Virus record (IMG/VR): IMGVR_UViG_3300021338_000003
Span: 1 to 64,000 of that record
DNA: 64,000 nt
Strand: one strand, 5' to 3'
Of this stretch, positions 45,684 to 60,178 are shown one piece after another. Both the position numbers and the translations under genes were made by a program. Position 1 is the first letter of the stretch; the number at the start of each line of letters is the position of its first letter. The notes under the pieces were generated by a model. The model saw only the letters and a program-made list of their open reading frames with translations. It was not told the origin of the DNA and did no database searches.

Positions 45684-45947
45684 ATGGTTCACGATGTAGA
45701 AATGGACTTTGATGGGGTTATCAACGACCCCAACATTTTCCCCGGCCATGGAAGGATGCTGGGCCATTTCTCCTTCCATGATGTTGAGAACAAGGCGTTG
45801 AAGGAGCATTATGCTCACTTTGCTTATTTGGCCATCCATGTTATAACCTCATGCCCTGCGGTTCTAGAGCGACAGGTGGAGGCCACGGTGGCACTACGTA
45901 AGCTTCTTGAGGCCCGGGACGCTTTCGAGCGGGCTGTGGCGTGGTAG
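45684..45947 (+). CDS. Acb2/Tad1-like helical hairpin protein (putative cyclic-nucleotide sponge)
   Basis: HFSFH...HFAYLA..VI..CP...EATVALRKLLEARDAFERAV; GGAGG RBS. Confidence 0.5.
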   Translation: MVHDVEMDFDGVINDPNIFPGHGRMLGHFSFHDVENKALKEHYAHFAYLAIHVITSCPAVLERQVEATVALRKLLEARDAFERAVAW

Positions 45948-47572
45948 CCAAGAAGAAAAAGAAGCCCCAGACTGCCATCCTCAACGAGCGGCTGTGGGTG
46001 CCTGCCGGGCATGTTGACAGGTCAATAACCTCCGAATTTACGTACACCTTCAAGAGGAAGGAAGACGTGCGAGTGGAGGATGACTCTGGATATTTCTCGC
46101 ACTACGAGTACCGGTTCTTCGATGAAGTGCATGAAATGTTCGTCCGTGAGGGCCGCATGTTCGGCTTCCATCGGGGTAACATTGAACGACTGAAGAAATT
46201 CTTCGGGCACCTGAAGTGGAAGGATGAGAGGACCTCCATTCCTATGGGGGCGGCCCTGGCTCATAAGGAAGGTATCTCCTACCGCCATGACCAAGAGAAG
46301 TGCATCCAGAGCATGCTCAAGACCGACGGCGGGGGCCTTCAAATCGCCCCTACCGGATGGGGGAAGACGTTCTTTGGTATCTCAATGGCCATCGAGACCG
46401 GACAGCGTACCCTAGTCCTAGCCAGCCGAACCAACTGGTTGGATGATTGGATGAAGGACCTCCGCAAGCATACCAACATGGAGGAGCTTGAAGAGGAGTA
46501 TGGCGGGCCAGTCTGCGGCATCATCAAGAACAGCGTCAGAGAAGAAGACCTCTTTCCTTGCATCAACTTCTGCACCTTCAGCGCATTCTACACCCATATT
46601 GCCGAGCACCAGAGAGAAAGACTCAAGAATTCTTTCGGGATGGTCATTGCAGATGAGGCGTCCCAGCTGCCAGCAAAGGAGGTGTCTGCCGCATTCACGG
46701 CATTCAACCCGAAGTGGCGGGTTGCCCTGACTGCCGATGAGAAAAGGGCTGACCGTCTCCATAAGCTCACGTACGATATCGTCGGCCCCATTATTTCTCG
46801 TGGCAAGAGAAGGGATAACCTGACTGGAAAGGTGATTCGTGAGAACTCGGGGATTACCCTGAATGCCGCCCGCTTCTATGGCAACTGGCTGGGTACCCTC
46901 CAGTCTAAGATCAGCAAGAACAAGCAATTCTCGGAGCTTGTGATTCGTAGGGCCATTGAAGATGTGGCTGCTGGGTACAAGGTGATGATTATCACCAAGA
47001 CCAAAGCCCAGGTGGCATACATCAGCCAGAGGCTAGCCACCGAGGAATATCCAGTCAGGCAGAGAAACAAGAAGACTGGGAAGACAAGGACCGTGTACCG
47101 CGAAATACAGGTGGCGGTCCTACAGGGTGGGAAGAGCAAAAGGGACAATTACAAAAACGACGAGGTCAAAAAGCAGGCCCGGGCCGGCGAAGTTGATGTC
47201 TTGGTGTGCACTCCTATCGTCGAACTCAATACCGACATCGACAGGATGGACTGCCTGCATGACATGATGCCTGTCGGAAACGAGCAGGCCATCCGCCAAA
47301 GATGGGGTCGTGTCGGCCGCGAGCACCCCGACAAGAAAACCCCTCGTATCCGGATTTGGGATTTCAAGGCCGGACCTGACCATCACCCCGCGGCCAAGTT
47401 CCTCGTCAAGGCTTGGGCCCTTAAGGAAGAGTGGGCCTTGCGCCATGGATATCAGATATCCGACTATACCCCCAGGGGGTCCCTGGAGCGTCTGGATGCC
47501 AGGATCCGGAGTAAGGAGGGGTCGGATAAGAGGGTCGAACAGAGCTTTATTAGGCGCAAGAAGGACTACTAG
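45941..47572 (+). CDS. Superfamily 2 DNA helicase (UvsW/XPB-like)
   Basis: Q-motif YRHDQ, APTGWGKT, IADEAS, ALTA and QRWGRVGR. Confidence 0.88.
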   Translation: MVAKKKKKPQTAILNERLWVPAGHVDRSITSEFTYTFKRKEDVRVEDDSGYFSHYEYRFFDEVHEMFVREGRMFGFHRGNIERLKKFFGHLKWKDERTSIPMGAALAHKEGISYRHDQEKCIQSMLKTDGGGLQIAPTGWGKTFFGISMAIETGQRTLVLASRTNWLDDWMKDLRKHTNMEELEEEYGGPVCGIIKNSVREEDLFPCINFCTFSAFYTHIAEHQRERLKNSFGMVIADEASQLPAKEVSAAFTAFNPKWRVALTADEKRADRLHKLTYDIVGPIISRGKRRDNLTGKVIRENSGITLNAARFYGNWLGTLQSKISKNKQFSELVIRRAIEDVAAGYKVMIITKTKAQVAYISQRLATEEYPVRQRNKKTGKTRTVYREIQVAVLQGGKSKRDNYKNDEVKKQARAGEVDVLVCTPIVELNTDIDRMDCLHDMMPVGNEQAIRQRWGRVGREHPDKKTPRIRIWDFKAGPDHHPAAKFLVKAWALKEEWALRHGYQISDYTPRGSLERLDARIRSKEGSDKRVEQSFIRRKKDY

Positions 47573-48210
47573 TGAAAAAGATCCACCGGGGATGGAAATT
47601 CAACAAAGCCACGACCCAGGAGAAGCTCTTGGCTCTGGCCGGAGTCCCTCCCGAGAATTGGAAGCCTATCAGTGGTGACGTGGTCTTCTCGAATATGTCA
47701 TACTCTCACTACCGTGGGAGTTCTACCATCACTGACAAAGAGCAGCAGGAGTGGTTCAACCTTCTGATGGACCCGGATGAATTGCTCAAGGGGCGGCTTG
47801 TGCTGATTGGGTGCCCAGGTCACGACACCCATGCTCTACATGTTGCAGTTGACATGGTCCGGCCCATCATGGACCAGGCTGCTGAATCGGGAGTAGCCAC
47901 CAAAAAGGTCAGGTTCACCGACCTGTCCCAGGTTCCAGATTTTGACACGTCAATGCCTGATGGTACCCGTGGTTCTCGTTGGTGGTGGGAGGGGAAGGAA
48001 ACCGCGGTTCATGTAATCCACAACATCACCGAGGAATGCACCCCTGGAAGGCTCCAAAAGTGCCGTGACGTCATTAGGGCTTTTCACCTGTCCACAAGGA
48101 TTGTGGTAATTGCTGGAGCTGACCCTATTGAGTTTGCCCTTGACGTTCTTCGAGTGAAGCCTGAGGTCTGTTTGTATATGGACCGGATTTCTGTGAAGGT
48201 GAGCCGTTGA
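47572..48210 (+). CDS. Putative degenerate DnaC/IstB-like helicase loader
   Basis: LVLIGCPGHDT at the Walker A position and VHVIHNI at the Walker B position; coupled to dnaB by a TTGA overlap. Confidence 0.45.
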   Translation: MKKIHRGWKFNKATTQEKLLALAGVPPENWKPISGDVVFSNMSYSHYRGSSTITDKEQQEWFNLLMDPDELLKGRLVLIGCPGHDTHALHVAVDMVRPIMDQAAESGVATKKVRFTDLSQVPDFDTSMPDGTRGSRWWWEGKETAVHVIHNITEECTPGRLQKCRDVIRAFHLSTRIVVIAGADPIEFALDVLRVKPEVCLYMDRISVKVSR

Positions 48211-49595
48211 GCAACTCAATGCCCTTGTACAACCCGAAGCTTGAACAGCGGGTTCTCGTTACTATTACCGATAGCCACGATCGGGCGCGTAACCACTTGA
48301 TGTCTCAGCTTCGGACTTCGTGGTTTGGATATGAGCCTGCTCTGGAGGTATACGAGCATGTTGCCAGGATGATGAGGGAAGGGGCGGAAATCCCTACTGC
48401 TCGAACTCTGGCTATGGACTCCGGCCTGACGGATAGGGCTCGCTCCTTCCTTCAGAAGGGTCAGGGGAGGGGGTCAAAGCATCCAGCAAGGATGTCCAAG
48501 AAGGCTGATCTCGAAAGGTCCCTCAAATACCTCTCCAAGTACAGAAAGCAGCGCATTTGCCACCACATTGGGAACCTTGTCGGTGATGAGCTGGAGAAGG
48601 AGAACCCAGACCACGAAGACCTCTTCGAAGATGTTGAGAAACTCATTCTCCAAGCCCGCAGAGGCCAGGGTCAGTCCATAGTCCACATCGGCCAGGGTGA
48701 CAACTTCAACGATGACTTTGAGGACCTTCTGTCCGACGAGTCAATCGATCTCATCCCTACCGGATGGAAGCCGTTTGACGCCGAGACGGGCGGATTTGGT
48801 CGCACAGACCTCGTGTTCCTGGCAGCCAATTATGGTGGCGGCAAGACCACTGTAGCCCTAGACATGGCCAAGAATGTCTACAAGGAAGGGTATTCGGTAT
48901 GCGTGGTCTCCCTGGAGATGCCCCGCCGTCAGGTGTGGGCTCGTGTCTGGTCCAATGAGACCAAGATTGAATTCTCAAAATTCCGTCTGCACAACCTCAG
49001 CGGTGACGACAAGAAGAGAATCCGCCATGCCCGCAAGAAGTGGATGGAGTATGGAAAAGCAAATGGGGTGCGATTCTCGGTTTGGAACCCCGGGGCCCTG
49101 ACACCAACCCAAATGATCAATGAGTTGAAGGCATATGGTTTCGACCTCATTATCGTTGACTACATCAATCTCTTTGAAATGCCTTCCGGGAAGGATGAGC
49201 GAATCGCCCTAGGTGAGATGGCCCGGACCCTGAAGCTTGGTGCCGGTGAAAACTTCCTCAACTGCCCTATCGTGGTCCTTGCTCAGCTCAATGACGAAAA
49301 TCGCATCAAATACAGCCGGGCCATGGCCGAGCACGCTGACTATATTTTGTGGTGGCGCCGGGATGATGAGGAGAAGATCACCCACTATTTTGATGTCCAC
49401 CAGGACAAGGCCCGTAACGCCCGCCAGTATTCTATGAAGTTCAGGGAAGATTTCTCCACCATGTCCGTTGAGGCGCTCCACGAGATCAAGCCTGAGACCC
49501 AGGATACTCCCAAGGAAGCGGACGAAGATCCCAAGAAGAAGCCCAAGAAGCGTAACAGACCACGCGGGGCCATGGATGGGTTGACCCTGTTGTGA
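48207..49595 (+). CDS. dnaB: DnaB-like replicative helicase
   Basis: IPTGW..FD...GGF, AANYGGGKT, VSLEM, IIVDYINL, VLAQLN, YSRAMAEHAD and KARN. Confidence 0.92.
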   Translation: MSNSMPLYNPKLEQRVLVTITDSHDRARNHLMSQLRTSWFGYEPALEVYEHVARMMREGAEIPTARTLAMDSGLTDRARSFLQKGQGRGSKHPARMSKKADLERSLKYLSKYRKQRICHHIGNLVGDELEKENPDHEDLFEDVEKLILQARRGQGQSIVHIGQGDNFNDDFEDLLSDESIDLIPTGWKPFDAETGGFGRTDLVFLAANYGGGKTTVALDMAKNVYKEGYSVCVVSLEMPRRQVWARVWSNETKIEFSKFRLHNLSGDDKKRIRHARKKWMEYGKANGVRFSVWNPGALTPTQMINELKAYGFDLIIVDYINLFEMPSGKDERIALGEMARTLKLGAGENFLNCPIVVLAQLNDENRIKYSRAMAEHADYILWWRRDDEEKITHYFDVHQDKARNARQYSMKFREDFSTMSVEALHEIKPETQDTPKEADEDPKKKPKKRNRPRGAMDGLTLL

Positions 49596-49601
49596 GGAAA
49601 T

Positions 49602-50543
49602 ATGCGTTCTCTTTTCGGCGAATCCAACGAACCAATGTTGGCCACCTCGATGGTGGGTCCACTGCTCAAGACGAAGTGTGTTCTGGTGGTGGATGTATCC
49701 AACATCGCCCACAGATGCTGGCACTCCCCAGGCTACAAGAACATGTCGCACAATGGTCAACAGACTGGCCACGTGTACGGTTTCTTTCGTACCATCGACT
49801 CCTTCGTCAACGCCTCAAAGATTCGGCCAGTATCCATCGTCTACTGCACAGACGGCCACGCAGCCGCAAGGTATGAAAGGTATCCTGAGTACAAAGGCAA
49901 TCGAGACAAGAAGTATGACCTCGTTCCAGAGGTTGTAGAGGTTGCTCACCTCATGCCTGGGTACACTGTGCATCGAGATGACTGGGAGGCCGATGACTGT
50001 GCCGGGTCTTTTGTGCGTGCTCTTCGGGCCCGGGAGGCCAAGGAAGGAGTTAGACCAGCCAAGGTCATGCTTGTCACTGGCGACAAGGATTTTGAGCAAT
50101 TGCTCGATTTTGAAGATGTCTATATTTGGACGTCCTCGAAATCCAACCCCTATGGTCCATCCGGAATCAAAGAAGCTCAGGACCCGCGACACATCCCGAT
50201 GATGAAGGCCATACATGGAGACACGTCGGATAACATCTTTGGAATTCCCTACTTCAAGAAGAAGGTCACAGCTGCGATCCTCCCCAAGATGGAGGACCCT
50301 CTATCTGTTGATGAGTTCGTGGCCCTAGCCAAGCAGGAATGCTCCAGTAGGGTGTACGAAAAGGTCCTGAATTACAGGAGAAAGGTCGAGGACAATATTT
50401 TCCTAACTCGCATCAGGACTGAACTCCGATTGAAGATACGCAAAAATCGGGCTTCGGAAAGTAAACTCCGAGGTCTACTACAAGACAAGTACGGATGCAG
50501 CAAGCTGGACCACAGCATGAGGAGGCTATTCGGTGGGCCGTAA
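49602..50543 (+). CDS. 5'-3' exonuclease / flap endonuclease (Pol I N-terminal, T5 D15-like)
   Basis: LVVD, RYERYPEYKGNR, EADD, TGDKDFEQL and GDTSDNIFGI. Confidence 0.92.
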   Translation: MRSLFGESNEPMLATSMVGPLLKTKCVLVVDVSNIAHRCWHSPGYKNMSHNGQQTGHVYGFFRTIDSFVNASKIRPVSIVYCTDGHAAARYERYPEYKGNRDKKYDLVPEVVEVAHLMPGYTVHRDDWEADDCAGSFVRALRAREAKEGVRPAKVMLVTGDKDFEQLLDFEDVYIWTSSKSNPYGPSGIKEAQDPRHIPMMKAIHGDTSDNIFGIPYFKKKVTAAILPKMEDPLSVDEFVALAKQECSSRVYEKVLNYRRKVEDNIFLTRIRTELRLKIRKNRASESKLRGLLQDKYGCSKLDHSMRRLFGGP

Positions 50544-51729
50544 TCTCAAGCGAAAGAAGAAAAACGTCTCCGAGCCACTGAGCCAGTGCCGGTTCAAGGT
50601 GGCCACCCAGGCTTTCCTTCATGGTCTGGGTCGAGTGTCCAGCATGCTGGCCATCAATGACGTTAAGGCCGAGCACCAACGGGTTCTCGTCACCGCCAAG
50701 GAAGAGGGGTACATACTCATCGAGTCTGGGTCCTCGGGGTCCTACTGCAAGGTCAAGGTCACGGCGGAGGTGGTTCAGCCTGGCTACTTCTGCACCCAGA
50801 TGCAGATCCCTCAACTTCGGTATGGCGGCCCGACCGTCATGTTCTCTACCGACACCGAGGCCAGGAGGGTCAAGTATTCCTCTCGGATCCGTGGAGACTT
50901 CGTATGCTCCACCAACCCAGACTCCATTGTCAGGAATCGCCCCAAGGACAAGCCAGAGAACTCCATGTGGGTGCCAGTCAAGAAGTTCTCGGAGGTATAT
51001 CAGACGGCATATTTCAACGCTGATGTGGCTGAAGACAACCCAGACGTGCTGGTGCGGTATGACATTGAGCCCAAGGCCAAGAAGGGTGACGGCCCGTCCC
51101 ACATCCTTCGTTTGACCGTCCATGACCTTCACCGTGCTGCCTTCTCCCATGATGGCATCTCGGTCAAGGGCAAGTCCGGCACTGGCACCTTCCTGGCTTC
51201 CTCGATGTGGAAGTTCCTCCGCGGAGCCTCCCAAGAGGAGGTGTCCATGATGATCGGGGCCACAGACGACTCCATATGGCTTCACACCGACGTCTGTACT
51301 TCGGTATCACCTAGGGTACATGGTAATGTCCGCAATGTGTCCGAGTGGTCCAATGCCTTCGAGGATGACGAATCTGATTTCGGGTTTGCTATTGACACTG
51401 CAAACCTTGTGGAGGCTGTTCGTGATGTGGCCTCTATTCATGATGGAGATGCCGAGTCCGAATACCGGTTGAGTATGATGGTCAACAAGAATGGCCGCAA
51501 GCTCAAGTTGGTCATGGAATCGAACATTGGGAAGGCCGAGCAGGAGATTCCGATCCATTCCGGGCAGGCAGGAACGGTGGATGTAGATTCGGCCTTCCTC
51601 CTCAATTCTCTGGGCCTCTTCAAAGAGAATTGCCCCTCCTTCTTCACAGTGTGGGAGAACGCACTACGGATGAAGGTTATGGGAGATCACGAGTCCACCC
51701 ATTTCATGAGCACTCTGGTGCGCCGATGA
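50533..51729 (+). CDS. Probable DNA sliding clamp (DnaN beta-like)
   Basis: 398 aa with a three-domain alpha/beta periodicity; LTVHDLHRAA resembles DnaN VATDGHRLA; replication-operon context with a DnaX loader in the window. Confidence 0.6.
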   Translation: MGRNLKRKKKNVSEPLSQCRFKVATQAFLHGLGRVSSMLAINDVKAEHQRVLVTAKEEGYILIESGSSGSYCKVKVTAEVVQPGYFCTQMQIPQLRYGGPTVMFSTDTEARRVKYSSRIRGDFVCSTNPDSIVRNRPKDKPENSMWVPVKKFSEVYQTAYFNADVAEDNPDVLVRYDIEPKAKKGDGPSHILRLTVHDLHRAAFSHDGISVKGKSGTGTFLASSMWKFLRGASQEEVSMMIGATDDSIWLHTDVCTSVSPRVHGNVRNVSEWSNAFEDDESDFGFAIDTANLVEAVRDVASIHDGDAESEYRLSMMVNKNGRKLKLVMESNIGKAEQEIPIHSGQAGTVDVDSAFLLNSLGLFKENCPSFFTVWENALRMKVMGDHESTHFMSTLVRR

Positions 51730-52205
51730 CTACTGATTTCACAAAAACCGGACCCCGAGAATTCAGGGTATATGTCCTGAAGTCGTCGAAGGCCCCTAGG
51801 AGAGAACCAGAGGAATATGGGGCACTCAAGAAGTCTTTGTATAGGGATGGTCGGGTGACCCTATATGTGTGGCTACATGATGGTAAGCCGATCATGTACT
51901 CCCTGGAAGTAAGCCGGGAGCCCACGGCTTCTGTGGATGGCCCTATTTCGGCCGCCATTTTTTTCAGGAAGCACTCCAAGGAGTACAAACGTCGCAAGAT
52001 GTCTGTCATGTTCAGGGATGAATACGTACGGCTGTTGCGGTTTGGGAAGAGCAATTTTGATTATGTGTTCTGTTGTTCCAAGCCCCGGTCCAATCTTCGA
52101 CTGGGCGATAGACGCTTTTCTACCATTGCCAACATTCATCCTATGGAAAAGGAAGTCACTCGTGTCAATGTGACCATACCCAAGAAGGAGCCAAACGATG
52201 GCTAG
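51726..52205 (+). CDS. Hypothetical protein
   Basis: ATGA coupling to the clamp gene. Confidence 0.55.
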   Translation: MTTDFTKTGPREFRVYVLKSSKAPRREPEEYGALKKSLYRDGRVTLYVWLHDGKPIMYSLEVSREPTASVDGPISAAIFFRKHSKEYKRRKMSVMFRDEYVRLLRFGKSNFDYVFCCSKPRSNLRLGDRRFSTIANIHPMEKEVTRVNVTIPKKEPNDG

Positions 52206-52998
52206 CAAGAAGCCGGAGGTATACCGGGATGAAGAGGGTAACCTTATGCGTCCAGAGGAGGTTGCGGGTACGGCCATATGCGGTCGGTGTATATTCTATT
52301 CTGCCCTTCACCCGGCAACCATGGGACCATGCAAGGATACGTTCTCAGTCACCCGCACAACCAGGGCGTGCGTGGACTTTGAAATCGATGTTGACCCGTC
52401 ATACTACCGTCGTATTTCTGCTGTGAAGAAATACAATCTTTTGGCAGGACCTTACCTGGAGCAGCTGGGGGACTTGATCGAAGAGGTTCAAAGCCTGGCC
52501 GGGCGAGTATTCTCTAGGGCCCAAACCAGAGCCGGCAATAAGAGGACCATGGCCCCAGTGTTGGAAGTCCTCAGGAAACACAAGGATACCTCTGCGCTCA
52601 TCCCATTTTTGGAGGAGGTGCAGAGGTACAGGGACCGCGTATCCGAAATTCAAAGTATGGCCATCAATTGGGCTGGGGAGATCGGGGTCATCAGAGAGAA
52701 GGCCGAATCTTACATGTATTCCAAGTTCTCAGAAACCCGTACCGTCAAGCCAGAAGCCATCAGGAAGGCCACTATCTCTTCCGTCCTAGCGGAGCTGCAG
52801 GAAGCCCATGACCGGGTGGATGTTCTCCTCAAACAATGTGATGCTGCCCTGCGCAATTTCTCTGCCCAGCATAACGCTCTCATTGAGATTCAGGTTTCTG
52901 CCCGCACACCGGTAGCAATCCCTAAGGTAGCCTTGTCCGAGTTGAAGGCTGATGATAGTCCCATCCTCCGGGGCAAGAGCAGGAATAGAAACCGGTGA
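52198..52998 (+). CDS. 4-Cys module plus long helical domain (UvsY-like recombination mediator?)
   Basis: CGRCIFY...C...CVDF at the N-terminus; long amphipathic helices at the C-terminus. Confidence 0.5.
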   Translation: MASKKPEVYRDEEGNLMRPEEVAGTAICGRCIFYSALHPATMGPCKDTFSVTRTTRACVDFEIDVDPSYYRRISAVKKYNLLAGPYLEQLGDLIEEVQSLAGRVFSRAQTRAGNKRTMAPVLEVLRKHKDTSALIPFLEEVQRYRDRVSEIQSMAINWAGEIGVIREKAESYMYSKFSETRTVKPEAIRKATISSVLAELQEAHDRVDVLLKQCDAALRNFSAQHNALIEIQVSARTPVAIPKVALSELKADDSPILRGKSRNRNR

Positions 52999-53453
52999 AT
53001 AGGCGCCCTACCATAGACGAACGGTCTTGTCCCGATTGCGGGCAAGCCGTAGACTGGGGAGAAGAAGGAAAAAGTCCGTCTAAACCAACTCTTTGCATGA
53101 GTTGCAATTGGGAAGGACCATTCTATAATACGATACCTCGTCCCCCTAACCCGAAAGATGGCAAGAGGGTGGATGACCTGTATTCTGCGTTCAAGGAAGT
53201 CCTTGAATTCGAAGTGGCATCAGAGAAAGCGTTTGGGAAATTTCAAAACTTCATGGTGTCAAATCCCAATGCCGACAATGATGAAACGTCCCAGAAGATA
53301 TTCAGGGAGTACATAGACAAGGTGGGCCAGATCAAATTCCTCATTAACATCTTGAGTCTGTCCAGTGTGGACCCGGAAGTAGCCAAGCACATCGTCGGTA
53401 ATGAGGTAAACAGGCTATTTCCGAACCTTCCAATGAGGATCGCCAGGCAATGA
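52995..53453 (+). CDS. Zinc-ribbon hypothetical protein
   Basis: CPDCG...CMSC. Confidence 0.55.
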   Translation: MNRRPTIDERSCPDCGQAVDWGEEGKSPSKPTLCMSCNWEGPFYNTIPRPPNPKDGKRVDDLYSAFKEVLEFEVASEKAFGKFQNFMVSNPNADNDETSQKIFREYIDKVGQIKFLINILSLSSVDPEVAKHIVGNEVNRLFPNLPMRIARQ

Positions 53454-53809
53454 AGATCCGCACGTTCTTTCTTCTGCTGAAGAATAGGGCCCCTATCTTC
53501 TCATCCAACGAGGGGAGGAGGTCGGTCCTGGTATGGACTTCCAGGGCCAAGGCTCGGGCCTATCAAAACGCCCGTACGAATGAAGGTGAAGATACATTCG
53601 ATATTGAGGAGTGGAAGCCTCTTTTCCTGGTCAAAACCCTCGAATCGTACAAGAGTGTGCTAGAAAAGGGAGGGGTCGAATGGGTAATGGTGGACCATCC
53701 GGGGAGGTCGGCGAAAAAGGTTCTGCACCTGAGATTGGAGGACGTGTTGGGCCTGGAAAGCAACCGTCCCTTCAGGGCGATCCGGGACAAAAGCACCCAG
53801 GGGTCGTAG
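53450..53809 (+). CDS. Hypothetical protein
   Basis: ATGA coupling. Confidence 0.55.
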   Translation: MKIRTFFLLLKNRAPIFSSNEGRRSVLVWTSRAKARAYQNARTNEGEDTFDIEEWKPLFLVKTLESYKSVLEKGGVEWVMVDHPGRSAKKVLHLRLEDVLGLESNRPFRAIRDKSTQGS

Positions 53810-53883
53810 CCCTCTCTCACCCTGGTCTGGAACAGCTGGTGGGTGGTGCTGTATTCCAGTTAGGCTCTGGACCCCAGAGGGGC

Positions 53884-54243
53884 ATGGCTGTGTCCGCTGC
53901 CCTGCGAGACATCACCCCCAAAGTTCAAGGCATCCTTCCTGAGTATTTGTATGACTCTAATCTGGATTTTGTCGAAGAGCCTACGGTGAACACCGAGTGT
54001 GACTTGGAGTCGTATATTCTCATTCGAGCCCAGGCTCTCGTGGTTGACCTTGACTACTCTCCGGCAGGAGCCGAATGCTTGATAGCCAAGGCCCACAAGA
54101 TTCCAGTGATTGGGCTCAGTGAGCGTAGAACGTTCTTGCCATCCACTCGAATCAACACCGATTACCTGATTTGGCCACGGCTAGAATCCGTGCAGCTCAT
54201 TGTAGAAGCCTTGAGGAGCCAGGTATGGCCAACGTCAAGATAG
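53884..54243 (+). CDS. Nucleoside 2-deoxyribosyltransferase-like protein (start uncertain)
   Basis: LIRAQALVVDLD...GAECLIAKAHKIPVIGL resembles the NDT motif AD.VVA.LD...G.E...A.A..KPV. Confidence 0.5.
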   Translation: MAVSAALRDITPKVQGILPEYLYDSNLDFVEEPTVNTECDLESYILIRAQALVVDLDYSPAGAECLIAKAHKIPVIGLSERRTFLPSTRINTDYLIWPRLESVQLIVEALRSQVWPTSR

Positions 54244-54806
54244 AGAAATACGACGACTACCCGACACCACTTCCTGACGCCCGGTATCTGACCTCTCTTC
54301 TTCCGATCGAACCGGGCTCAACCATACTTGAGCCCCATGCCAACAAAGGCAACTTCCTCCGAGCCATCAAGCTTGAGACTCGGGGCATGGGCTGCAAGTA
54401 TTTTGCCAATGAATATCAGGCGAAGTACATTCCTACGCTTCGGAGGGTTATCCGGCCCAAAAGAGTACGACATGGGGATTTCTTTGACATCAAACCTCGG
54501 AGCGATGGTAGGTTTCGGTTTGATTGGGCCATTGGCAATCCTCCATTCACCGGAAATTCTGGGATTCTCCATACAGAGCATGCCCTGAAGCTCGCTCGAA
54601 ACGTAGCATTCTTTCTTCCGCTGCGCTACCTCTCGTCGGGTCAGAGATTCCAGTTTTGGAATGAATCACCCATTCGTCGTTTTTGGAGTGTTGCAGAGAG
54701 GCCGGTATTTGTTGGTTCCTCTGGTGGTCGTACGGATTATGCTTTCTACCACTGGCAGCACGGATACGAAGAAGAGCCTACGTTCGGGGTGATTTCGCTC
54801 TTGTGA
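54225..54806 (+). CDS. Orphan amino (N6-adenine/N4-cytosine) DNA methyltransferase
   Basis: DYPTP, ILEPHANKGNF (SAM binding), GDFF and IGNPPF (motif IV); ATG 54225 after GAGGAG. Confidence 0.85.
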   Translation: MANVKIEKYDDYPTPLPDARYLTSLLPIEPGSTILEPHANKGNFLRAIKLETRGMGCKYFANEYQAKYIPTLRRVIRPKRVRHGDFFDIKPRSDGRFRFDWAIGNPPFTGNSGILHTEHALKLARNVAFFLPLRYLSSGQRFQFWNESPIRRFWSVAERPVFVGSSGGRTDYAFYHWQHGYEEEPTFGVISLL

Positions 54807-54815
54807 GGGGTCAGC

Positions 54816-57767
54816 ATGTTTGAAGACGATCCAAAGCGTAATCTCATTGAGGATGCGCGTGTGTGGATCTCGGGGGTCGAGGTAACCTCCCGCTTGACCT
54901 CGGCTGTCACCATCACCAAGGTAGGAAGGGGTAGCCATAACACTGTTCAGTTCACCCTATCGAACGCTTCGGATGGGTTCGTCCTTAATGAGAGGAACCT
55001 TGATTCCAGCTTGCCTCTGAATGAGCGGTTCTATACTGGTGGCAGTCCAGCCGAGCATGGTGAGAGCATCAAGCTCGCAATGTTCCAGTACAAGAACGAT
55101 GAAACCAGAAATCCAATTGATGAGCAGACCGGAGAGCGACGGTGGCCCCTATCGGTCAACTCGACCATTCTCCACTCCCTGGACACCATCTTTGTGGCGG
55201 AACGTTGGCCCTATAGTCAACAAACCCTCTACTATCCAGCGTTCAAAGGATATGTCGAAACCAAAACCATCTCGGAAAACTTCGTCAATGGACAGTCCAA
55301 CATTACGGTCACTGGCTTTGACATCCGGGCTTTGATATCTCGGATGCGGCTTCAGATGAATTACGTCATCACCAACGCGTTGGCTCCGGTGTCTTTCAAT
55401 TCTGGAGCCACGTCCAATGCTGATACTCTGAATGCCTTCGACCCAGTGGTTCAGGAGGGTATATTCTCGGACCTTCAGAATCCGAGCCAATGGACCACTC
55501 CTGTCGCTGGTCTGTCCCTCAAGGATACCATCGAGTTCTTGGTGACTGGAACCATCACCGAGACCGAAGAGATCCAAATTCCTGGGTATTCTAGCGAAAT
55601 TCGGGACAAAATTCTCTCTACTTCTCGGGAGGAAGTGGCCCGCAGGGGTGTGGGCCGAATGAAGACTGGTATTGTTGTTTCCTATCCCAATGGGGGCGGG
55701 GAGAGTGCCAACGATGTGAGGATTTTGGAGGAATGGCACCGCCTGTGCCTATTCGGGGTACCCGATCAGGGGGACGATCTCGAAGTATCCGACGAGGCTC
55801 AAGATGCGGTGTCGGCTGACCTTCCCGACGAGGATGCCGACACTTTGAATCTCACCCTAGGCCAGCGCCTGTTGTTCTCCACCTCAAGCCGGCCCTGGAC
55901 CCCAGAAGAGACCGAGCGTCACGGCCAAGGAAGCACCTGGGATGGCCCTACAGCCCCTCATGCTATGTCTCTCCATTTCCTATTGCCTTCTACTGGCGGA
56001 GGCATGAATGGGGTCACATCCTTCACGGTGGACCAGGGTTCTGATGAAAGACGTTGGCAGAGCCGGATGTCTATTATAGAGGATTATCTCGACAACCTGG
56101 ACTACCACATCGCGGTGACTGGCGCCGGGGATATGGTCATCGAATTTCCAATGTATGACTTCCAGCCGGACAGGTTTGGTGAATTCGAGGAGGCATTTCG
56201 AGTTCGGCACGATGGGGAAGGAAAGTCCATCACCTTTGATGATGACCGACCCAACGTCCCAGCCTGCATGATCATGACTGCAGGGTACAACCCAGATGTA
56301 GAGAGGATAGGGCAACTTGAGGACGCGGCCGTGGAAGAGGAATTCACCTCGGTGTTGCGAGTCGTCCTCCTGGCCCCTGTCGTGGCGTCCCGTATTGGGA
56401 TGAATATCGAGCGAACGTCCCTGCCGTTTGCATTGGATGACGTTTGCCGTCTCCGTCAATTCGCCGTCTTGCGATTCCAAAGGAAGCTTGCTGAGGCCAA
56501 CAACCTTGCGGTTGACTTGGTTTATCGACCACTCCTGTTCCCAAATCGGCCGCTCCACGAAAGCAAGCGGGACCGGATGGGGTGGATATCCCAGGTGACG
56601 TCCACCGTCCCCCCCTCTCGTATGCACATGGGACACGCCACCATTGGTGCTGTCCTGAAGTACGTCCGAAAGCCGGTTACCTTGGCCAACGGTGACATCG
56701 AATACCGTCTCATCACGGGCTCGAAGACGCTTCCTCTCTCGTACACCGGAGAGGGTCCGGCCATGAACTCGTCCCGGGGTATTCTTATTTCGGACACGAG
56801 CCCTACGGACTTGGACATCACTGCCGACCCGTGTGATGGGTCCACCCGCGGTGCCCCTGCGGTTGACTACTTGTCCTTGGACAATGCCATCGGCTTGGTA
56901 TTTGATGAGAATGCCGCCCAATCTTGCTCTAAGAGTGCCGATGACTTGGCAGCCGACGTTCGGTCTCTGTGGGAGCGTCTCCAGCAGCTGGCGTTGGACG
57001 AGTTGCGCCTGAGGCTGGAGCTTACGTGTACGTTCCGTGACCCAGTGGTGGACACGAACGAGCCGTTTGACCCTGACCTTCACTCCATATATCCTGCCCG
57101 GGCTTTTGACCTTGTGGTGTACCGGTGGGACTTCTCGGCTGGTACCCAGGAGGATTACGAAGCTGTTGGGGCCCTAGGAAAGTCCATCGGTCTACAATGG
57201 GGAGGAGATGCTCCTACTTTCGAGTCGGCTCCCACTATTGCCGATGTGCAGGAAAAGATCTTCGAGCGAGTGAACTTCCACCTATCCAACACCAGCACCC
57301 GGTTCAAGGACGGAGGGTCTGGTACTCCCTACATATATGGCGGAGCGTTCAACAAGCAAGACCCATCCCCTAAGTCCATTGGGGTTGATTGCTCCGGTCT
57401 GATCGTTGACTGCTATGTGTACGCTGGTCTGATGAGCCGGGATACCCGCCCAAACTCAAGCCAGCTTGCTGGTATCTTTCCCTCGACCGACAACCCCAGA
57501 CCCGGGGACATCCTGTTTGTAGGCAAGGGGCGAATCACCCATTGCGTGCTTATTGGTGAAGCTGGGTATCCCTCAGTGGTTGGTGCTTCGGGTGGAACCA
57601 AGGACACAACCACCCTCAAGAAGGCAAGTGACAAGAATGCTCGGGTGAAGACTTTCAGCAATTACGTTCCGGGAATTCGCCCCGAGTCTGAAGTCCAGGG
57701 TTTTGCCACACCCTTCGACAACCTCGTGTCCAGTATTCCCTTCCTAAACCACTTCAGTCTCCCGTGA
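54816..57767 (+). CDS. Baseplate hub-like tail protein fused to peptidoglycan hydrolase domains (M15 and NlpC/P60)
   Basis: N-terminal hub-like beta region (FKGYVET...ITVTGFD). C-terminal M15 motifs TFRD...LH...AFD...LQWGGD...HF, and NlpC/P60 PYIYGG...DCSGL...PGDILF...HCVL. Confidence 0.75.
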   Translation: MFEDDPKRNLIEDARVWISGVEVTSRLTSAVTITKVGRGSHNTVQFTLSNASDGFVLNERNLDSSLPLNERFYTGGSPAEHGESIKLAMFQYKNDETRNPIDEQTGERRWPLSVNSTILHSLDTIFVAERWPYSQQTLYYPAFKGYVETKTISENFVNGQSNITVTGFDIRALISRMRLQMNYVITNALAPVSFNSGATSNADTLNAFDPVVQEGIFSDLQNPSQWTTPVAGLSLKDTIEFLVTGTITETEEIQIPGYSSEIRDKILSTSREEVARRGVGRMKTGIVVSYPNGGGESANDVRILEEWHRLCLFGVPDQGDDLEVSDEAQDAVSADLPDEDADTLNLTLGQRLLFSTSSRPWTPEETERHGQGSTWDGPTAPHAMSLHFLLPSTGGGMNGVTSFTVDQGSDERRWQSRMSIIEDYLDNLDYHIAVTGAGDMVIEFPMYDFQPDRFGEFEEAFRVRHDGEGKSITFDDDRPNVPACMIMTAGYNPDVERIGQLEDAAVEEEFTSVLRVVLLAPVVASRIGMNIERTSLPFALDDVCRLRQFAVLRFQRKLAEANNLAVDLVYRPLLFPNRPLHESKRDRMGWISQVTSTVPPSRMHMGHATIGAVLKYVRKPVTLANGDIEYRLITGSKTLPLSYTGEGPAMNSSRGILISDTSPTDLDITADPCDGSTRGAPAVDYLSLDNAIGLVFDENAAQSCSKSADDLAADVRSLWERLQQLALDELRLRLELTCTFRDPVVDTNEPFDPDLHSIYPARAFDLVVYRWDFSAGTQEDYEAVGALGKSIGLQWGGDAPTFESAPTIADVQEKIFERVNFHLSNTSTRFKDGGSGTPYIYGGAFNKQDPSPKSIGVDCSGLIVDCYVYAGLMSRDTRPNSSQLAGIFPSTDNPRPGDILFVGKGRITHCVLIGEAGYPSVVGASGGTKDTTTLKKASDKNARVKTFSNYVPGIRPESEVQGFATPFDNLVSSIPFLNHFSLP

Positions 57768-59107
57768 GTCCAATGATCACTGCAGCCACTGGTCCGGCCC
57801 CGGATTCGCAGAATATCGCCCTGAAGACCAAAGAGGAATTCCTGAAGAGTAGGAATCCTAGAGGCAAGTTTCATGACCCCAAGTCCTATGACCAAGGATT
57901 AGAGGAACTCAATCGCGACTATAAGCGACGAGGTATTGGGGAAATCTCATATGGCCATGACCAACTTTTGGTGGAGGAAACATCCGATGGTCTGTTTCTC
58001 AACCACCGGCAACGTGGACCAGTGGCCTACCTGTATGACACCATCCTATACCACATCCATGGCTTCAACCCAGGCCGATTGGCTGACCGATATTGGTCCG
58101 AGGAGTGGACCTCAAGCGATAACGACTGGGTGAATTTTGCTTTCTCCCGGTCTGTGAAGGTCAAATATCTGGCTGAGGTGGTTGAGGCAAAAAGTAGTCA
58201 AGGCCGACGTATGAGGAGGAAATATCCTCGTGTTCTGCAACGCCTGAAGAGAAAGAAGCAAGAATTTGAGCTTCGCCAGGGTGCCGAAGACCAACCGTTA
58301 GGTATGAATCTTGCCATCCTCAACGGTAAGGGGGAGGTAGTGGCCGTGGCTCAGAATGAATGGGGTGCCACTCTGGTCATTGTGGCCCGAGAATACCGAG
58401 GTATGGGCCTCGGCCAGTATATCACCGAGAAGTGGTATGAGATGAACCCTCAGAACGAGTCTGGCGGATTCACTCCTCAAGGGTACAACAACGCCATCCG
58501 AGTGTGGGAGAAGGCCGTCCGTGACCTCTTGGCGCGGGGCTGGTATTCCCAACTGGTTAGAGATGGGTCCTTGACCCAAGAGAAAGCGCAGGATATCATC
58601 TCCGGGCTGTCTGACTCCAAGGTTCAACGGTCTAACATACCGGAGCCTAGTCAAGAGGAGGTTGCGAAGGCCAAGCCTCTAATCCTTGTGGATGACAACA
58701 TCTCCTTCGTATTGTATGACGCTAGGGTATACGAAGGGTCGGTCGATGACGTTTATGACGGAAAGTACGTATATGGCTACGGATTTCTGCGTGATTCCGG
58801 CGACAAAACCTTCATCTTCTCCTTGGACTATGACCGACCATATGCCAGGTTGGCCACGGCCATTATCATGCAGATGGCCAGAGACGAAGGTGAGGATCTC
58901 TATGACGGAGAAGGATACCACGACCTCGTAGAATTTGATCTCCTACCTGGGGGATCTTGGGAACGAGATGGTGACCTGGTAAGGTTGAAGGAAGACCTTC
59001 TGGACCTTGAGGGGGCGGCCATTATTGAAAGAAACATTCGGAACGCCAACGACAAGTATGGGATGTACCGTACGTCTCTCCTAGAAACGGCAAACAGTAA
59101 GTGGTGA
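57764..59107 (+). CDS. GNAT acetyltransferase-domain protein
   Basis: IVAREYRGMGLGQ (acetyl-CoA motif A) and FTPQG. Confidence 0.65.
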   Translation: MSPMITAATGPAPDSQNIALKTKEEFLKSRNPRGKFHDPKSYDQGLEELNRDYKRRGIGEISYGHDQLLVEETSDGLFLNHRQRGPVAYLYDTILYHIHGFNPGRLADRYWSEEWTSSDNDWVNFAFSRSVKVKYLAEVVEAKSSQGRRMRRKYPRVLQRLKRKKQEFELRQGAEDQPLGMNLAILNGKGEVVAVAQNEWGATLVIVAREYRGMGLGQYITEKWYEMNPQNESGGFTPQGYNNAIRVWEKAVRDLLARGWYSQLVRDGSLTQEKAQDIISGLSDSKVQRSNIPEPSQEEVAKAKPLILVDDNISFVLYDARVYEGSVDDVYDGKYVYGYGFLRDSGDKTFIFSLDYDRPYARLATAIIMQMARDEGEDLYDGEGYHDLVEFDLLPGGSWERDGDLVRLKEDLLDLEGAAIIERNIRNANDKYGMYRTSLLETANSKW

Positions 59108-59110
59108 CCG

Positions 59111-60178
59111 ATGGATGACTGGCGCAAAATAGCCCGAGAGGCCACGTCCAAGCCTGCCGATGAAAGGGAAGGTCTCAACCGCCCCACCGAGGCTGTGGTT
59201 GAATCTGTCTCCACCGAAACTGAGACCATTCAGGCTTCCGACTTCGGTGGCGGTGGAAAATGTATAGTCACACACCCGTTCATGGGTGTGCGATCTTGGA
59301 TTCGAGCCCTGCCCGAGCGAGGCGCCTCGGTAGTCTTGTCCCGGCGCGGAGATTCTGCGGTTTCCGAAACCGCATATTACCGGTCCCTGGATCCTGCCCG
59401 CCGGGTGGCCAAATATAGGGCCGGTGTTGGCTACTATCGTGCTATTGACCAGGGCGAATTCGATATGTCGTCCTATGGGTTGGCCCAGGTGTACGGGTCC
59501 CGGGGCGGGTCTTTGGACCTCCGTGGAGGCATCACTAGGGGGTGGTTCAATAACGAGTCCCTTGAGGTTGGATTCAAGGCTCCACTTCACGTTCGTCAGC
59601 TCCACGACCATCGATATGCCAGCCTGGCGGGAGAAGAGAGGTTTGGTGCCGTGTGGAGGCCGACCGGACTTCAGAATGATACCCGGGGATGGCAGGAAAT
59701 CGATGGGTCCTTTGCCCGGGAATATACCCGTGTTCTATCTTTCCAGGGTATTCCTGGTGTCTTGGTAGACTACCGTGAGGGACATGTCTTTGAGGATGAT
59801 GGGTCCCGGGCCAACACTCCATCAGCTCAGCCTGCCCGACGCCGGGCGATATACTACGATTCTCAAGGGGACAACAACCTGGAGTTGATGGACGAATCTG
59901 GCAACACCTGGGAGTTTCTCTCTTCCAATGCCAAACTTGGCAAGCAAATAGACATCCCAGAGGGATCCCACCGCATCAAGGTAGGAGTTAACATCGCCAT
60001 GCAGGCGGACAAGGATATTACTGCCACAGGCCAAAACCTCATCGTGCGGACAAGGAACATCATTCACCTGGAGTCCGAAGTGGCCATCAAGCTCGTGTCC
60101 AAGGGGATGATCACCCTGAGCGCGGCGATAGTCGAAATAAACAAGAGAGTCATCAACTCTACACCCTCGCCCTTCTGA
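59111..60178 (+). CDS. Baseplate spike / gp5-gpV-like protein
   Basis: N-terminal OB-like region with LPERGASVVL, C-terminal beta-helix-like repeats and position next to the hub gene. Confidence 0.6.
   Translation: MDDWRKIAREATSKPADEREGLNRPTEAVVESVSTETETIQASDFGGGGKCIVTHPFMGVRSWIRALPERGASVVLSRRGDSAVSETAYYRSLDPARRVAKYRAGVGYYRAIDQGEFDMSSYGLAQVYGSRGGSLDLRGGITRGWFNNESLEVGFKAPLHVRQLHDHRYASLAGEERFGAVWRPTGLQNDTRGWQEIDGSFAREYTRVLSFQGIPGVLVDYREGHVFEDDGSRANTPSAQPARRRAIYYDSQGDNNLELMDESGNTWEFLSSNAKLGKQIDIPEGSHRIKVGVNIAMQADKDITATGQNLIVRTRNIIHLESEVAIKLVSKGMITLSAAIVEINKRVINSTPSPF

What the first reader, a model, noticed from the sequence alone, without database searches (positions are those of the whole stretch)
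56930..57767. NlpC/P60 domain inserted inside an M15 peptidase domain at the end of the baseplate hub
Seen: M15C-type motifs run L...V....L...TFR...LH......AFD...VGALGKSIGLQWGGD. The closing DxxHF motif normally follows within about 10 aa, but here it appears only at the extreme C-terminus (FLNHFSLP) after a complete NlpC/P60 domain of about 170 aa (PYIYGG, DCSGL, PGDILF, HCVL). The Zn ligands H, D and H are all present, but the catalytic acid before the last His is Phe. Inference: a nested dual hydrolase, or an inactivated M15 scaffold that presents an active NlpC/P60.
Basis: partly seen in the sequence, partly recalled or inferred. Interest (0 to 1): 0.6.

Follow-up and report, generated by a model that had tools for sequence, protein, structure and literature searches.

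The report
NlpC/P60 peptidase nested inside M15 fold
The last 280 residues of a large phage's baseplate-hub-like protein are a cell-wall-cutting cysteine peptidase inserted into the final loop of a zinc-peptidase fold that keeps its metal ligands but has lost its catalytic acid, a rare wiring of two common parts.

Summary
The gene at window 54816..57767 (+) encodes 983 aa. After a hub-like N-terminal part it carries an M15 (VanY/M15_4-type) core, residues 704-800. Next comes a complete NlpC/P60 domain (about 807-967), and then a 9-residue tail (975-983, ...NHFSLP).

- **M15 relatives:** 32 standalone M15 relatives all close with [D/E]xxH[F/I][E/Q] 7-11 residues after WGG.
- **Fused proteins:** the 11 fused representatives close 160-190 residues later, with an invariant NHF.
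- **NlpC/P60 relatives:** about 75 standalone relatives stop 12-16 residues before that tail.
- **Structure model:** in an AlphaFold2 model (pLDDT 88.6), four M15 crystal structures align at Z 10.5-11.2 from model residue 10 to the last residue, skipping the insert.
- **Split-chain test:** an independent fold docks only residues 975-983 onto the M15 core. H979 sits against D765 (score 0.77, best control 0.21).

The residue three before the last His is F/Y/A/N in 11 of 11 fused proteins, never D/E. The Ser-x-His serine is also lost, and the Arg is lost in 5 of 11.

Most likely this is a virion-associated lysin. An intact Cys-His NlpC/P60 is held by a Zn-binding, catalytically dead M15 scaffold that may still bind peptidoglycan. 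I rate it a new variant of a known kind, of moderate interest.

The parts
54816..57767 (+). Whole gene: 983 aa plus stop (protein P0001).
   Evidence: It is one uninterrupted ORF. Full-length homologs of 770-1018 aa exist.
54816..56885 (+). N-terminal region of about 690 aa, hub-like (gp44 / GPD / gp27-type look-alike).
   Evidence: No Pfam, PHROG or PDB sequence match was found. The Atlas's own model of residues 10-640 resembles Phage_GPD / Gp44 hub clusters, with TM by row 0.73-0.79. It is well conserved among the 11 homologs.
56925..57215 (+). M15 (VanY/M15_4-like, LAS fold) core, residues 704-800. It holds helix 1, the strand with C738 and R741, H756, D765, helix 2 and the LQWGG strand.
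   Evidence: The profile of this part finds Pfam-confirmed M15_4/VanY proteins at whole-library E down to 1.4e-10. hhalign gives probability 99.8%. Pfam itself is below threshold, 12.7-14.4 bits against 25. The fold matches LysECD7, ChiX, Ply500 and LysB4 at Z 10.5-11.2.
57081..57083 (+). Codon of H756, the first predicted Zn ligand.
   Evidence: It is invariant in 11 of 11 and aligns with the SxH histidine of standalone M15.
57108..57110 (+). Codon of D765, the second predicted Zn ligand (AFD).
   Evidence: It is invariant in 11 of 11. It is predicted to touch H979.
57234..57716 (+). Inserted NlpC/P60 (C40) domain, residues about 807-967. It includes its N-terminal helix 808-823 (with H822), C859, H909 and GASGG 923-927.
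   Evidence: Pfam PF00877 scores 29.9-33.8 bits against a cut-off of 23. The fold gives Z 13-16 on model residues 112-273. About 75 standalone relatives of 135-175 aa cover exactly this span.
57390..57392 (+). Codon of C859, the NlpC/P60 nucleophile (DCSG).
   Evidence: It is kept in all 11 fused proteins and in the standalone relatives.
57540..57542 (+). Codon of H909, the NlpC/P60 catalytic His.
   Evidence: It is kept in all 11 fused proteins and in the standalone relatives.
57717..57737 (+). Return linker, residues 968-974.
   Evidence: Confidence is lower here, with pLDDT about 66 in the block for model residues 271-280. The sequence is variable among homologs.
57738..57764 (+). Closing strand of the M15 fold, residues 975-983. 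F976 stands in the place of the catalytic acid, followed by N978, H979 (third predicted Zn ligand) and F980.
   Evidence: NHF is invariant in 11 of 11. It is absent from NlpC/P60-only relatives. It forms a strand at model residues 284-286, pLDDT about 84. M15 structures align through to residue 288. Only 975-983 dock on the core, with pairs 765-979, 763/764-980/981 and 793-795 with 979-981.
59111..60178 (+). Downstream spike-like gene, 355 aa (context, not part of the enzyme).
   Evidence: The Atlas feature search scores 0.94, with 186 shared features, for Phage_base_V clusters. There are structural look-alikes of Mu Gp45 and gpV. Its homolog follows the hub gene directly in L001 and L101.

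Best explanation
The C-terminal 280 residues of this hub-like tail protein form one nested two-domain peptidoglycan-hydrolase module. The chain first builds nearly all of an M15 (VanY/M15_4-type, LAS-fold) zinc-peptidase domain, residues 704-800. It leaves that domain in the loop after the conserved WGG and folds into a complete NlpC/P60 cysteine peptidase (about 807-967). It then returns with nine residues (975-983) that form the last beta-strand of the M15 sheet and supply the third metal ligand, H979, next to H756 and D765.

The M15 domain is most likely a pseudo-enzyme. It keeps the Zn ligands and the conserved Trp. It has lost the catalytic acid (F976) and the Ser of Ser-x-His, and in half of the family the substrate-binding Arg as well. 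It therefore probably acts as a Zn-stabilised scaffold that may still bind peptidoglycan stem peptides.

The inserted NlpC/P60 (C859, H909) is the likely working hydrolase. It would open the cell wall locally when the tail penetrates.

Shown or predicted here: homology of both parts, the position of the insert, family-wide conservation, and the predicted packing of the tail. Inferred: Zn binding, loss of M15 activity, NlpC/P60 activity and bond specificity, and the role at infection.
For: - **M15 core homology:** the profile search of 1.84 billion representatives gave 38 hits. Six are long proteins of the same architecture. The other 32 are small proteins; all but one of the ten I scanned match Peptidase_M15_4 or VanY, eight above Pfam's cut-off, and the two nearest match endolysin PHROGs. 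hhalign of the core against them gives probability 99.8%, E 1e-27.
- **Closing motif in relatives without the insert:** they all close with [D/E]xxH 7-11 residues after GG, and several end right there, as in ...PHFQL.
- **Closing motif in the fused proteins:** all 11 have an invariant NHF 160-190 residues after WGG, at or near the C-terminus.
- **NlpC/P60-only relatives:** about 75 of them share the N-terminal helix and end at the equivalent of residue 967, without the tail.
- **AlphaFold2 model:** with 118 rows it has mean pLDDT 88.6, and the tail forms a strand at model residues 284-286.
- **Structural alignment:** LysECD7 gives Z 11.2 (100 residues aligned, rmsd 2.5). ChiX gives 10.9, Ply500 gives 10.8 (103 aligned, chain 14..137) and LysB4 gives 10.5. 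All span model residues 10/11..288. NlpC/P60 structures at Z 13-16 occupy 112..273.
- **Split-chain fold:** ESMFold2 without an alignment scores 0.77 against a best control of 0.21. That mark was reached by 51 of 78 solved complexes and 2 of 108 mismatched pairs. Runs agree in at least 71% of contacts, and partner pLDDT is at least 47. Only 975-983 touch the core, with H979 against D765 and W795.
- **Loss of catalytic features:** the residue three before the last His is F/A/Y/N in 11 of 11. The Ser of SxH is D or Y. The Arg is Asn in 5 of 11.
- **Experimental precedent:** EndoT5 D130A, a mutant of the equivalent acid, is inactive yet still competes for peptidoglycan (PMC10487532).
Against: - All structural evidence is prediction. 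I could not read coordinates, so the Zn-site geometry is inferred from aligned ranges and a contact list.
- Only 11 rows of the alignment cover the tail. Both predictors may place it from memory of the M15 fold.
- By sequence alone the tail adds no score. The global hhalign score is 144.7 with the tail, 146.1 with the segment after WGG, and 140.8 with a reversed tail.
- Pfam's M15_4 model is not reached.
- pTM of 0.69 leaves the relative orientation of the domains uncertain.
- The NlpC/P60 subfamily has Gly where the usual third triad residue sits, so its activity is also inferred.
- An invariant Glu (E749) or N978 might replace the missing base.
Confidence: 0.72

Rival explanations
1. True nested dual hydrolase. 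The topology is the same, but the M15 domain is still catalytic and uses a substitute general base (for example invariant E749 or N978). The module then cuts two different bonds of the stem peptide.
For: All three metal ligands and the conserved Trp are invariant in 11 of 11 despite 33-54% identity. E749 is invariant. Other LAS enzymes use bases other than Asp or Glu (established knowledge of the HxH-type M15A and M23 enzymes, not tested here).
Against: No acidic or His residue stands three or two residues before H979 in any of the 11 members. The Ser of SxH is lost in all, and the Arg in 5 of 11. EndoT5 D130A is completely inactive (PMC10487532).
Confidence: 0.15
2. Plain tandem arrangement. 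A truncated M15 remnant lacking its last strand is followed by NlpC/P60. The conserved C-terminal NHF tail then serves something else, for example contact with the spike or another hub subunit, or completion or regulation of the NlpC/P60 site, which lacks its usual third residue.
For: The tail gives no extra profile score over controls. The NlpC/P60 subfamily has Gly at the third triad position, so a His supplied from elsewhere is conceivable. Both structural tests are predictions.
Against: Standalone members of the same NlpC/P60 subfamily manage without the tail. In the model, M15 structures align through to the last residue while NlpC/P60 structures end at 271-281. The isolated tail docks on the isolated M15 core with H979 at D765, and the controls fail. 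An M15 sheet without its last strand and third ligand would hardly keep H756 and D765 invariant.
Confidence: 0.08
3. H822 (RxxFH), 25 residues after WGG, is the real closing His, and the two domains are simply consecutive.
For: It is invariant in the first six homologs. Its distance from D765 (57 residues) resembles that in EndoT5 (D73 to H133).
Against: It is absent in P0010. It lies at the end of helix 113-128 of the model, which belongs to the part aligned with NlpC/P60 structures. The same His is present in NlpC/P60-only proteins L031, L043 and L059.
Confidence: 0.03

Closest known systems
Single-domain M15 phage endolysins (EndoT5, LysECD7 8q2g, Ply500 catalytic domain 2vo9, LysB4 6akv) and ChiX 5opz
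   Same: They share the fold (Z 10.5-11.2), the H...D...H metal ligands, the conserved Trp before the last loop, and a closing H-F strand at the C-terminus. The nearest sequence relatives are small proteins of 117-200 aa that hit endolysin PHROGs.
   Different: Here the loop between WGG and the closing strand holds a whole domain of about 165 aa instead of 7-11 residues. The catalytic Asp/Glu three before the last His is replaced by Phe. The helix-loop between the TCTxR strand and the first His is shortened. The domain sits at the end of a tail protein, not in a lysis enzyme.
Tail and baseplate proteins carrying NlpC/P60 or CHAP domains (phrog_329 minor tail proteins, Myxococcus phages Mx8 p72 / Mx9, the diffocin baseplate protein 8v3w_H, the phi812 baseplate 9eug_A)
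   Same: In each, an NlpC/P60-type peptidase is built into the tail tip for cell-wall penetration. The insert hits phrog_329, Mx8 and Mx9, and these structures.
   Different: In those proteins the peptidase is an ordinary consecutive domain. None is reported, or seen here, as being threaded through an M15 fold.
T4 gp5 and phi29 gp13 (established knowledge, not tested here)
   Same: Both are hub, spike or knob proteins that carry wall-degrading domains. gp13 combines two hydrolase folds, one of them a LAS-type metallopeptidase. In gp5 the lysozyme lies between other domains of the same chain.
   Different: The enzyme families differ (lysozyme, M23) and the domains are arranged in series. Both gp13 domains are regarded as active. 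Neither has one enzyme fold interrupted by another.
Non-catalytic cell-wall enzyme folds used for binding (RipD 4jxb/4lj1; the EndoT5 D130A mutant)
   Same: These are precedents that a hydrolase fold stripped of a catalytic residue can still bind peptidoglycan (titles; PMC10487532).
   Different: RipD is a dead NlpC/P60. Here the NlpC/P60 looks alive and the M15 looks dead.

Membership tests
Peptidase M15 (M15_4 / VanY-like, LAS fold) | Match to the curated Pfam model above its gathering score | tested here: not met
   PF13539 scores 12.7-14.4 bits against a cut-off of 25. Only 1 of 5 homologs matches at all.
Peptidase M15 (M15_4 / VanY-like, LAS fold) | Significant profile homology to bona fide members | tested here: met
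   The profile of residues 702-800 finds 32 small proteins at E 1.4e-10 to 1e-3 over the whole library. Of the ten I scanned, nine match M15_4 or VanY and eight exceed Pfam's cut-off. hhalign gives probability 99.8%.
Peptidase M15 (M15_4 / VanY-like, LAS fold) | LAS (hedgehog / DD-peptidase) fold, including the last strand | tested here: met
   On a predicted model only. Z is 10.5-11.2 to four M15 structures and 9.5 to hedgehog N-domains, with aligned range 5-11..288.
Peptidase M15 (M15_4 / VanY-like, LAS fold) | Three Zn ligands, His, Asp and His, brought together | tested here: inconclusive
   H756, D765 and H979 are invariant, and H979 is predicted to touch D765. No coordinates or metal analysis were available.
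Peptidase M15 (M15_4 / VanY-like, LAS fold) | Catalytic Asp/Glu three residues before the last His | tested here: not met
   The residue is F976 here, and F/A/Y/N in 11 of 11 fused proteins. It is D or E in every standalone relative that could be parsed.
Peptidase M15 (M15_4 / VanY-like, LAS fold) | Ser-x-His serine and the Arg of the TCTxR strand | tested here: not met
   The Ser is replaced by Asp (6) or Tyr (5). The Arg is kept in 6 of 11, including this protein (R741), and is Asn in 5.
NlpC/P60 (peptidase C40) | Match to PF00877 above its gathering score | tested here: met
   It scores 29.9-33.8 bits against 23, and 5 of 5 homologs match.
NlpC/P60 (peptidase C40) | Papain-like NlpC/P60 fold | tested here: met
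   On a predicted model. Z is 16.0 to 7cfl_B (120 aligned, rmsd 1.9), with 40 rows at Z 12.6 or more on model residues 112-273. An Atlas viral NlpC/P60 cluster gives TM 0.87.
NlpC/P60 (peptidase C40) | Catalytic Cys and His | tested here: met
   C859 (DCSG) and H909 are kept in all 11 fused proteins and in the standalone relatives.
NlpC/P60 (peptidase C40) | Third polar triad residue at the canonical position | tested here: not met
   G923 of VGASGG aligns with the Asp or His of canonical members L004 and L005. This holds for the whole standalone subfamily.
Baseplate hub (Mu gp44 / P2 gpD / T4 gp27 type) | Sequence family match | tested here: not met
   No Pfam, PHROG or PDB sequence hit was found for residues 1-690, nor for the 11 homologs.
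Baseplate hub (Mu gp44 / P2 gpD / T4 gp27 type) | Hub fold, with an adjacent central spike gene | tested here: inconclusive
   The Atlas's own model (pLDDT 0.54) resembles GPD / Gp44 clusters, TM by row 0.73-0.79. The downstream 355-aa protein resembles Phage_base_V / Mu Gp45. I had no model of my own for this part.

The most novel reading that the evidence does not exclude
The module is a true nested dual hydrolase. The M15 domain would still work through a non-canonical base (E749 or N978) and would be mechanically coupled to the inserted NlpC/P60 through the two connecting linkers. Docking or undocking of the C-terminal strand during tail contraction would then switch both active sites on together.
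Probability: 0.12. Interest if true: 0.7.

Novelty: new variant of a known kind. Interest (0 to 1): 0.5.

Why it matters
Tail-tip lysins and M15 or NlpC/P60 enzymes are well known. One wall-hydrolase fold threaded through another, with the host fold turned into a metal-binding pseudo-enzyme, has not turned up in the searches made here. The nested form was absent from BFVD, from Atlas clusters of 50 or more members, and from the representative prokaryote genomes. The literature search found no description of it.

- **Annotation:** domain-based annotation sees only NlpC/P60 here, so similar discontinuous domains are probably being missed.
- **Engineering:** the loop between the conserved Trp and the closing strand of M15 enzymes can evidently accept a whole domain. 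That could be useful for engineered lysins.
- **Natural experiment:** the family is a test of what an M15 fold does once its catalytic acid is gone.
- **Limit:** the family is small, 11 representatives among 1.84 billion, and confined to large uncultured phages. The biological reach is therefore limited.

Tried and rejected
- **First AlphaFold2 run:** with only 5 homologs it gave mean pLDDT 49.6 and was unusable.
- **Alignment A6:** with the M15-only rows cut before xWGG, MAFFT scattered those rows into the NlpC/P60 columns. I discarded it. I used A5 instead, where only five residues per M15-only row are displaced onto the similar WGG of the NlpC/P60 domain.
- **Tail homology by sequence alone:** hhalign of chimeric alignments (core plus tail, plus next segment, plus reversed tail) gave no discrimination, scoring 144.7, 146.1 and 140.8.
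- **PDB sequence search with the M15 profile:** only chance hits.
- **N-terminal 690 residues:** Pfam, PHROG and PDB sequence searches, including all 11 homologs, found nothing.
- **H822 as the closing His:** rejected.
- **Phage GenBank collection:** only Mx8 and Mx9 NlpC/P60 matches, no full-length relative.
- **Genome scans:** the scan with the M15-core alignment could not be run because no stretch was conserved enough. The scan with the whole module found only NlpC/P60-only genes, mostly in Zixiibacteriota and Ignavibacteriales MAGs.
- **Literature searches:** no description of this arrangement was found.
- **Not used:** Read laying and the look-up of sequencing runs.
Full report
**What is there.** The finding lies in one uninterrupted ORF, window 54816..57767 (+), 983 aa, kept as P0001. 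The window is part of a 250,817-bp metagenome contig (L021). The surrounding genes are phage-like. They include helicases, a DnaB-like helicase, an exonuclease, a clamp loader, an SbcC-like protein, a sigma factor and a methyltransferase. The codon boundary is 56931 and the M15-like domain begins slightly earlier, at C704.

**Family scans.** Pfam finds NlpC/P60 at residues 836-912, with 29.9 bits against a cut-off of 23. The M15_4 match is sub-threshold, 12.7-14.4 bits against 25, and covers profile positions 13-59 of 70, that is, without the closing motif. PHROGs gives a minor tail protein family (phrog_329) for the NlpC/P60 part and weak endolysin families for the M15 part. So sequence families alone confirm the insert and leave the M15 part open.

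**Relatives with the same architecture.**
- The word search found four (P0002-P0005, 36-51% identical over the module).
- IMG/VR gave a fifth, on a 176-kb viral contig (L001, P0006).
- The exhaustive profile search with the M15 core (alignment A4) found 38 proteins among 1.84 billion representatives. Six are long proteins of the same architecture: P0004 and P0007-P0011, 770-1018 aa.

In all 11 proteins H756, D765, W795 and a terminal N/A-H-F are kept. The residue three before that His is F, A, Y or N, never D or E.

**Relatives lacking the insert.** The other 32 hits are small proteins. Of the ten scanned, nine hit Peptidase_M15_4 or VanY and eight did so above Pfam's cut-off. The two nearest hit endolysin PHROGs at E 1e-19 to 1e-26. 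They share the N-terminal helix, the TCTxR strand, SxH, PAxAFD with the same His-to-Asp spacing as here, and GLxWGG. Every one closes with [D/E]xxH[F/I][E/Q] 7-11 residues after the GG, and several end right there. hhalign of the fused cores against these proteins gives probability 99.8%, E 1e-27. The M15 core is therefore homologous to real M15 peptidases, and what it lacks locally is exactly the closing strand.

**Relatives of the insert alone.** The metagenome scan returned about 75 distinct small proteins of 135-175 aa with the same NlpC/P60 subtype. These are their shared features.
- They share the helix that precedes PYxWGG, then DCSG, the His, and the unusual IGASGG.
- They end at GFxDPF, the equivalent of residue 967 here.
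- None carries the NHF tail, including the one whose match ran furthest (L125).
It recurs in NlpC/P60-only proteins L031, L043 and L059 and is missing in family member P0010. It belongs to the insert, not to the M15 site.

**Does the tail pack into the M15 domain?** By sequence alone this cannot be shown. Adding the tail to the core does not raise the profile-profile score above controls. Structure prediction is what decides it here.

The second used 118 rows. These were the 11 fused proteins, the 32 M15-only proteins cut before their closing motif so as not to prejudge the answer, and the NlpC/P60-only proteins (alignment A5). It reached mean pLDDT 88.6 and pTM 0.69. The tail forms a strand at model residues 284-286, which are H979-F980-S981.

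Structural alignment of this model to solved structures gave two sets of matches.
- NlpC/P60 domains align at Z 13-16 on model residues 112-273.
- M15 enzymes align from model residue 10 or 11 to residue 288. LysECD7 gives Z 11.2 with 100 residues aligned. ChiX gives 10.9, Ply500 gives 10.8 with 103 aligned (chain 14..137), and LysB4 gives 10.5.

An alignment of about 100 residues that spans 278 must skip the insert and pick up the tail.

As an independent test I folded the M15 core (700-804) and the last 34 residues (950-983) as separate chains, with Zn, in ESMFold2 without any alignment.
- The score was 0.77 against a best control of 0.21.
- That mark was reached by 51 of 78 solved complexes and 2 of 108 mismatched pairs.
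- The runs agree in at least 71% of contacts, and partner pLDDT is at least 47.
- Only residues 975-983 touch the core. They lie between the 762-768 strand and the 792-797 strand and against helices 1 and 2.
- The best-defined pairs are 764/765 with 979/980 and 793-795 with 979-981.

Both predictors put the terminal H-F segment into the M15 sheet beside D765.

**What the M15 domain probably does.** In EndoT5 the metal ligands are H66, D73 and H133, and the catalytic aspartate is D130, three residues before the last His. The D130A mutant is completely inactive but still competes with the wild type for peptidoglycan (PMC10487532). Here that position is F976 and is never acidic in the family. The Ser of SxH is Asp or Tyr, and the Arg of TCTxR is Asn in 5 of 11. 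The ligands and the Trp are invariant. I read this as a pseudo-peptidase that keeps a structural metal site and perhaps substrate binding. An invariant Glu (E749) leaves some room for residual or altered catalysis.

**What the insert probably does.** Cys and His are intact in all members. The canonical third residue is Gly in the whole subfamily, including the standalone proteins, so this is a property of the subtype and not a sign of decay. The bond cut cannot be told from sequence.

**Context.** The N-terminal 690 residues match no sequence family. The Atlas's own model of them resembles Phage_GPD / Mu Gp44 / DUF5047 hub proteins, with TM by row 0.73-0.79. The 355-aa protein downstream resembles Phage_base_V / Mu Gp45 spikes. 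In relatives L001 and L101 that spike-like gene follows the hub gene directly. 'Baseplate hub' is thus a reasonable but only structurally suggested label.

**Novelty.** No BFVD entry and no Atlas cluster matched both domains together; the best TM by query was 0.48, and the best-fitting rows covered the NlpC/P60 part only. The representative prokaryote genomes held only the standalone NlpC/P60. Two literature searches found no description. These searches are limited, so absence is not proven. Tail-associated NlpC/P60 domains, M15 endolysins and dead hydrolase folds used for binding are all known. The discontinuous M15 fold with a nested NlpC/P60 and a family-wide loss of the M15 acid is a new variant.

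**Verdict.**
- The nested reading is supported, with confidence about 0.85 for the topology.
- The 'dead scaffold plus live NlpC/P60' reading is preferred, with confidence about 0.6-0.7.
- Interest is moderate.

Noticed in passing
window 57764..59107 (+): A 447-aa gene has a GTG start that overlaps the hub stop codon. It matches phrog_29287 (unknown function, E 7e-91) and gives a faint GNAT hit of 14.5 bits. It lies between the hub and spike genes here. In relatives L001 and L101 the spike-like gene follows the hub directly, so this looks like an inserted gene.
   Followed up: partly
window 57582..57596 (GASGG 923-927), and loci L022-L100: The NlpC/P60 subtype has Gly where the canonical third triad residue (His/Asp) sits. 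This applies to the fused proteins and to about 75 standalone proteins of 135-175 aa. The standalone ones occur in metagenomes and in Zixiibacteriota and Ignavibacteriales MAGs.
   Followed up: partly
window 56925..56927 (C704) and 57027..57029 (C738): A Cys pair is invariant in the M15 core of all 11 fused proteins. C704 is marked as a beta-bridge in the model. Some standalone M15 relatives (P0018, P0022, P0037) also carry both Cys residues. This may be a disulfide or a second metal site.
   Followed up: no
proteins P0001-P0011: The fused family splits into two types. One has D-x-H plus Arg (P0001-4, 7, 10). The other has Y-x-H plus Asn (P0005, 6, 8, 9, 11) at the eroded M15 active-site positions.
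   Followed up: partly
window 59111..60178 (+): This 355-aa protein has no Pfam or PHROG hit, but its features and predicted shape resemble Phage_base_V / Mu Gp45 central spikes.
   Followed up: partly
window 22890..27338 and 27375..31139 (+): Two very large ORFs, 1482 and 1254 aa, have almost no PHROG matches. The only hit is a short tail-protein-like stretch at the start of the second.
   Followed up: no
window 45941..54806 (+), and L101 1..9996: The hub gene follows directly on a replication block (helicase, DnaB-like helicase, exonuclease). In this window a DNA methyltransferase also lies immediately upstream of it. The same replication-then-hub order is kept in the relative on the NCBI contig.
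   Followed up: no
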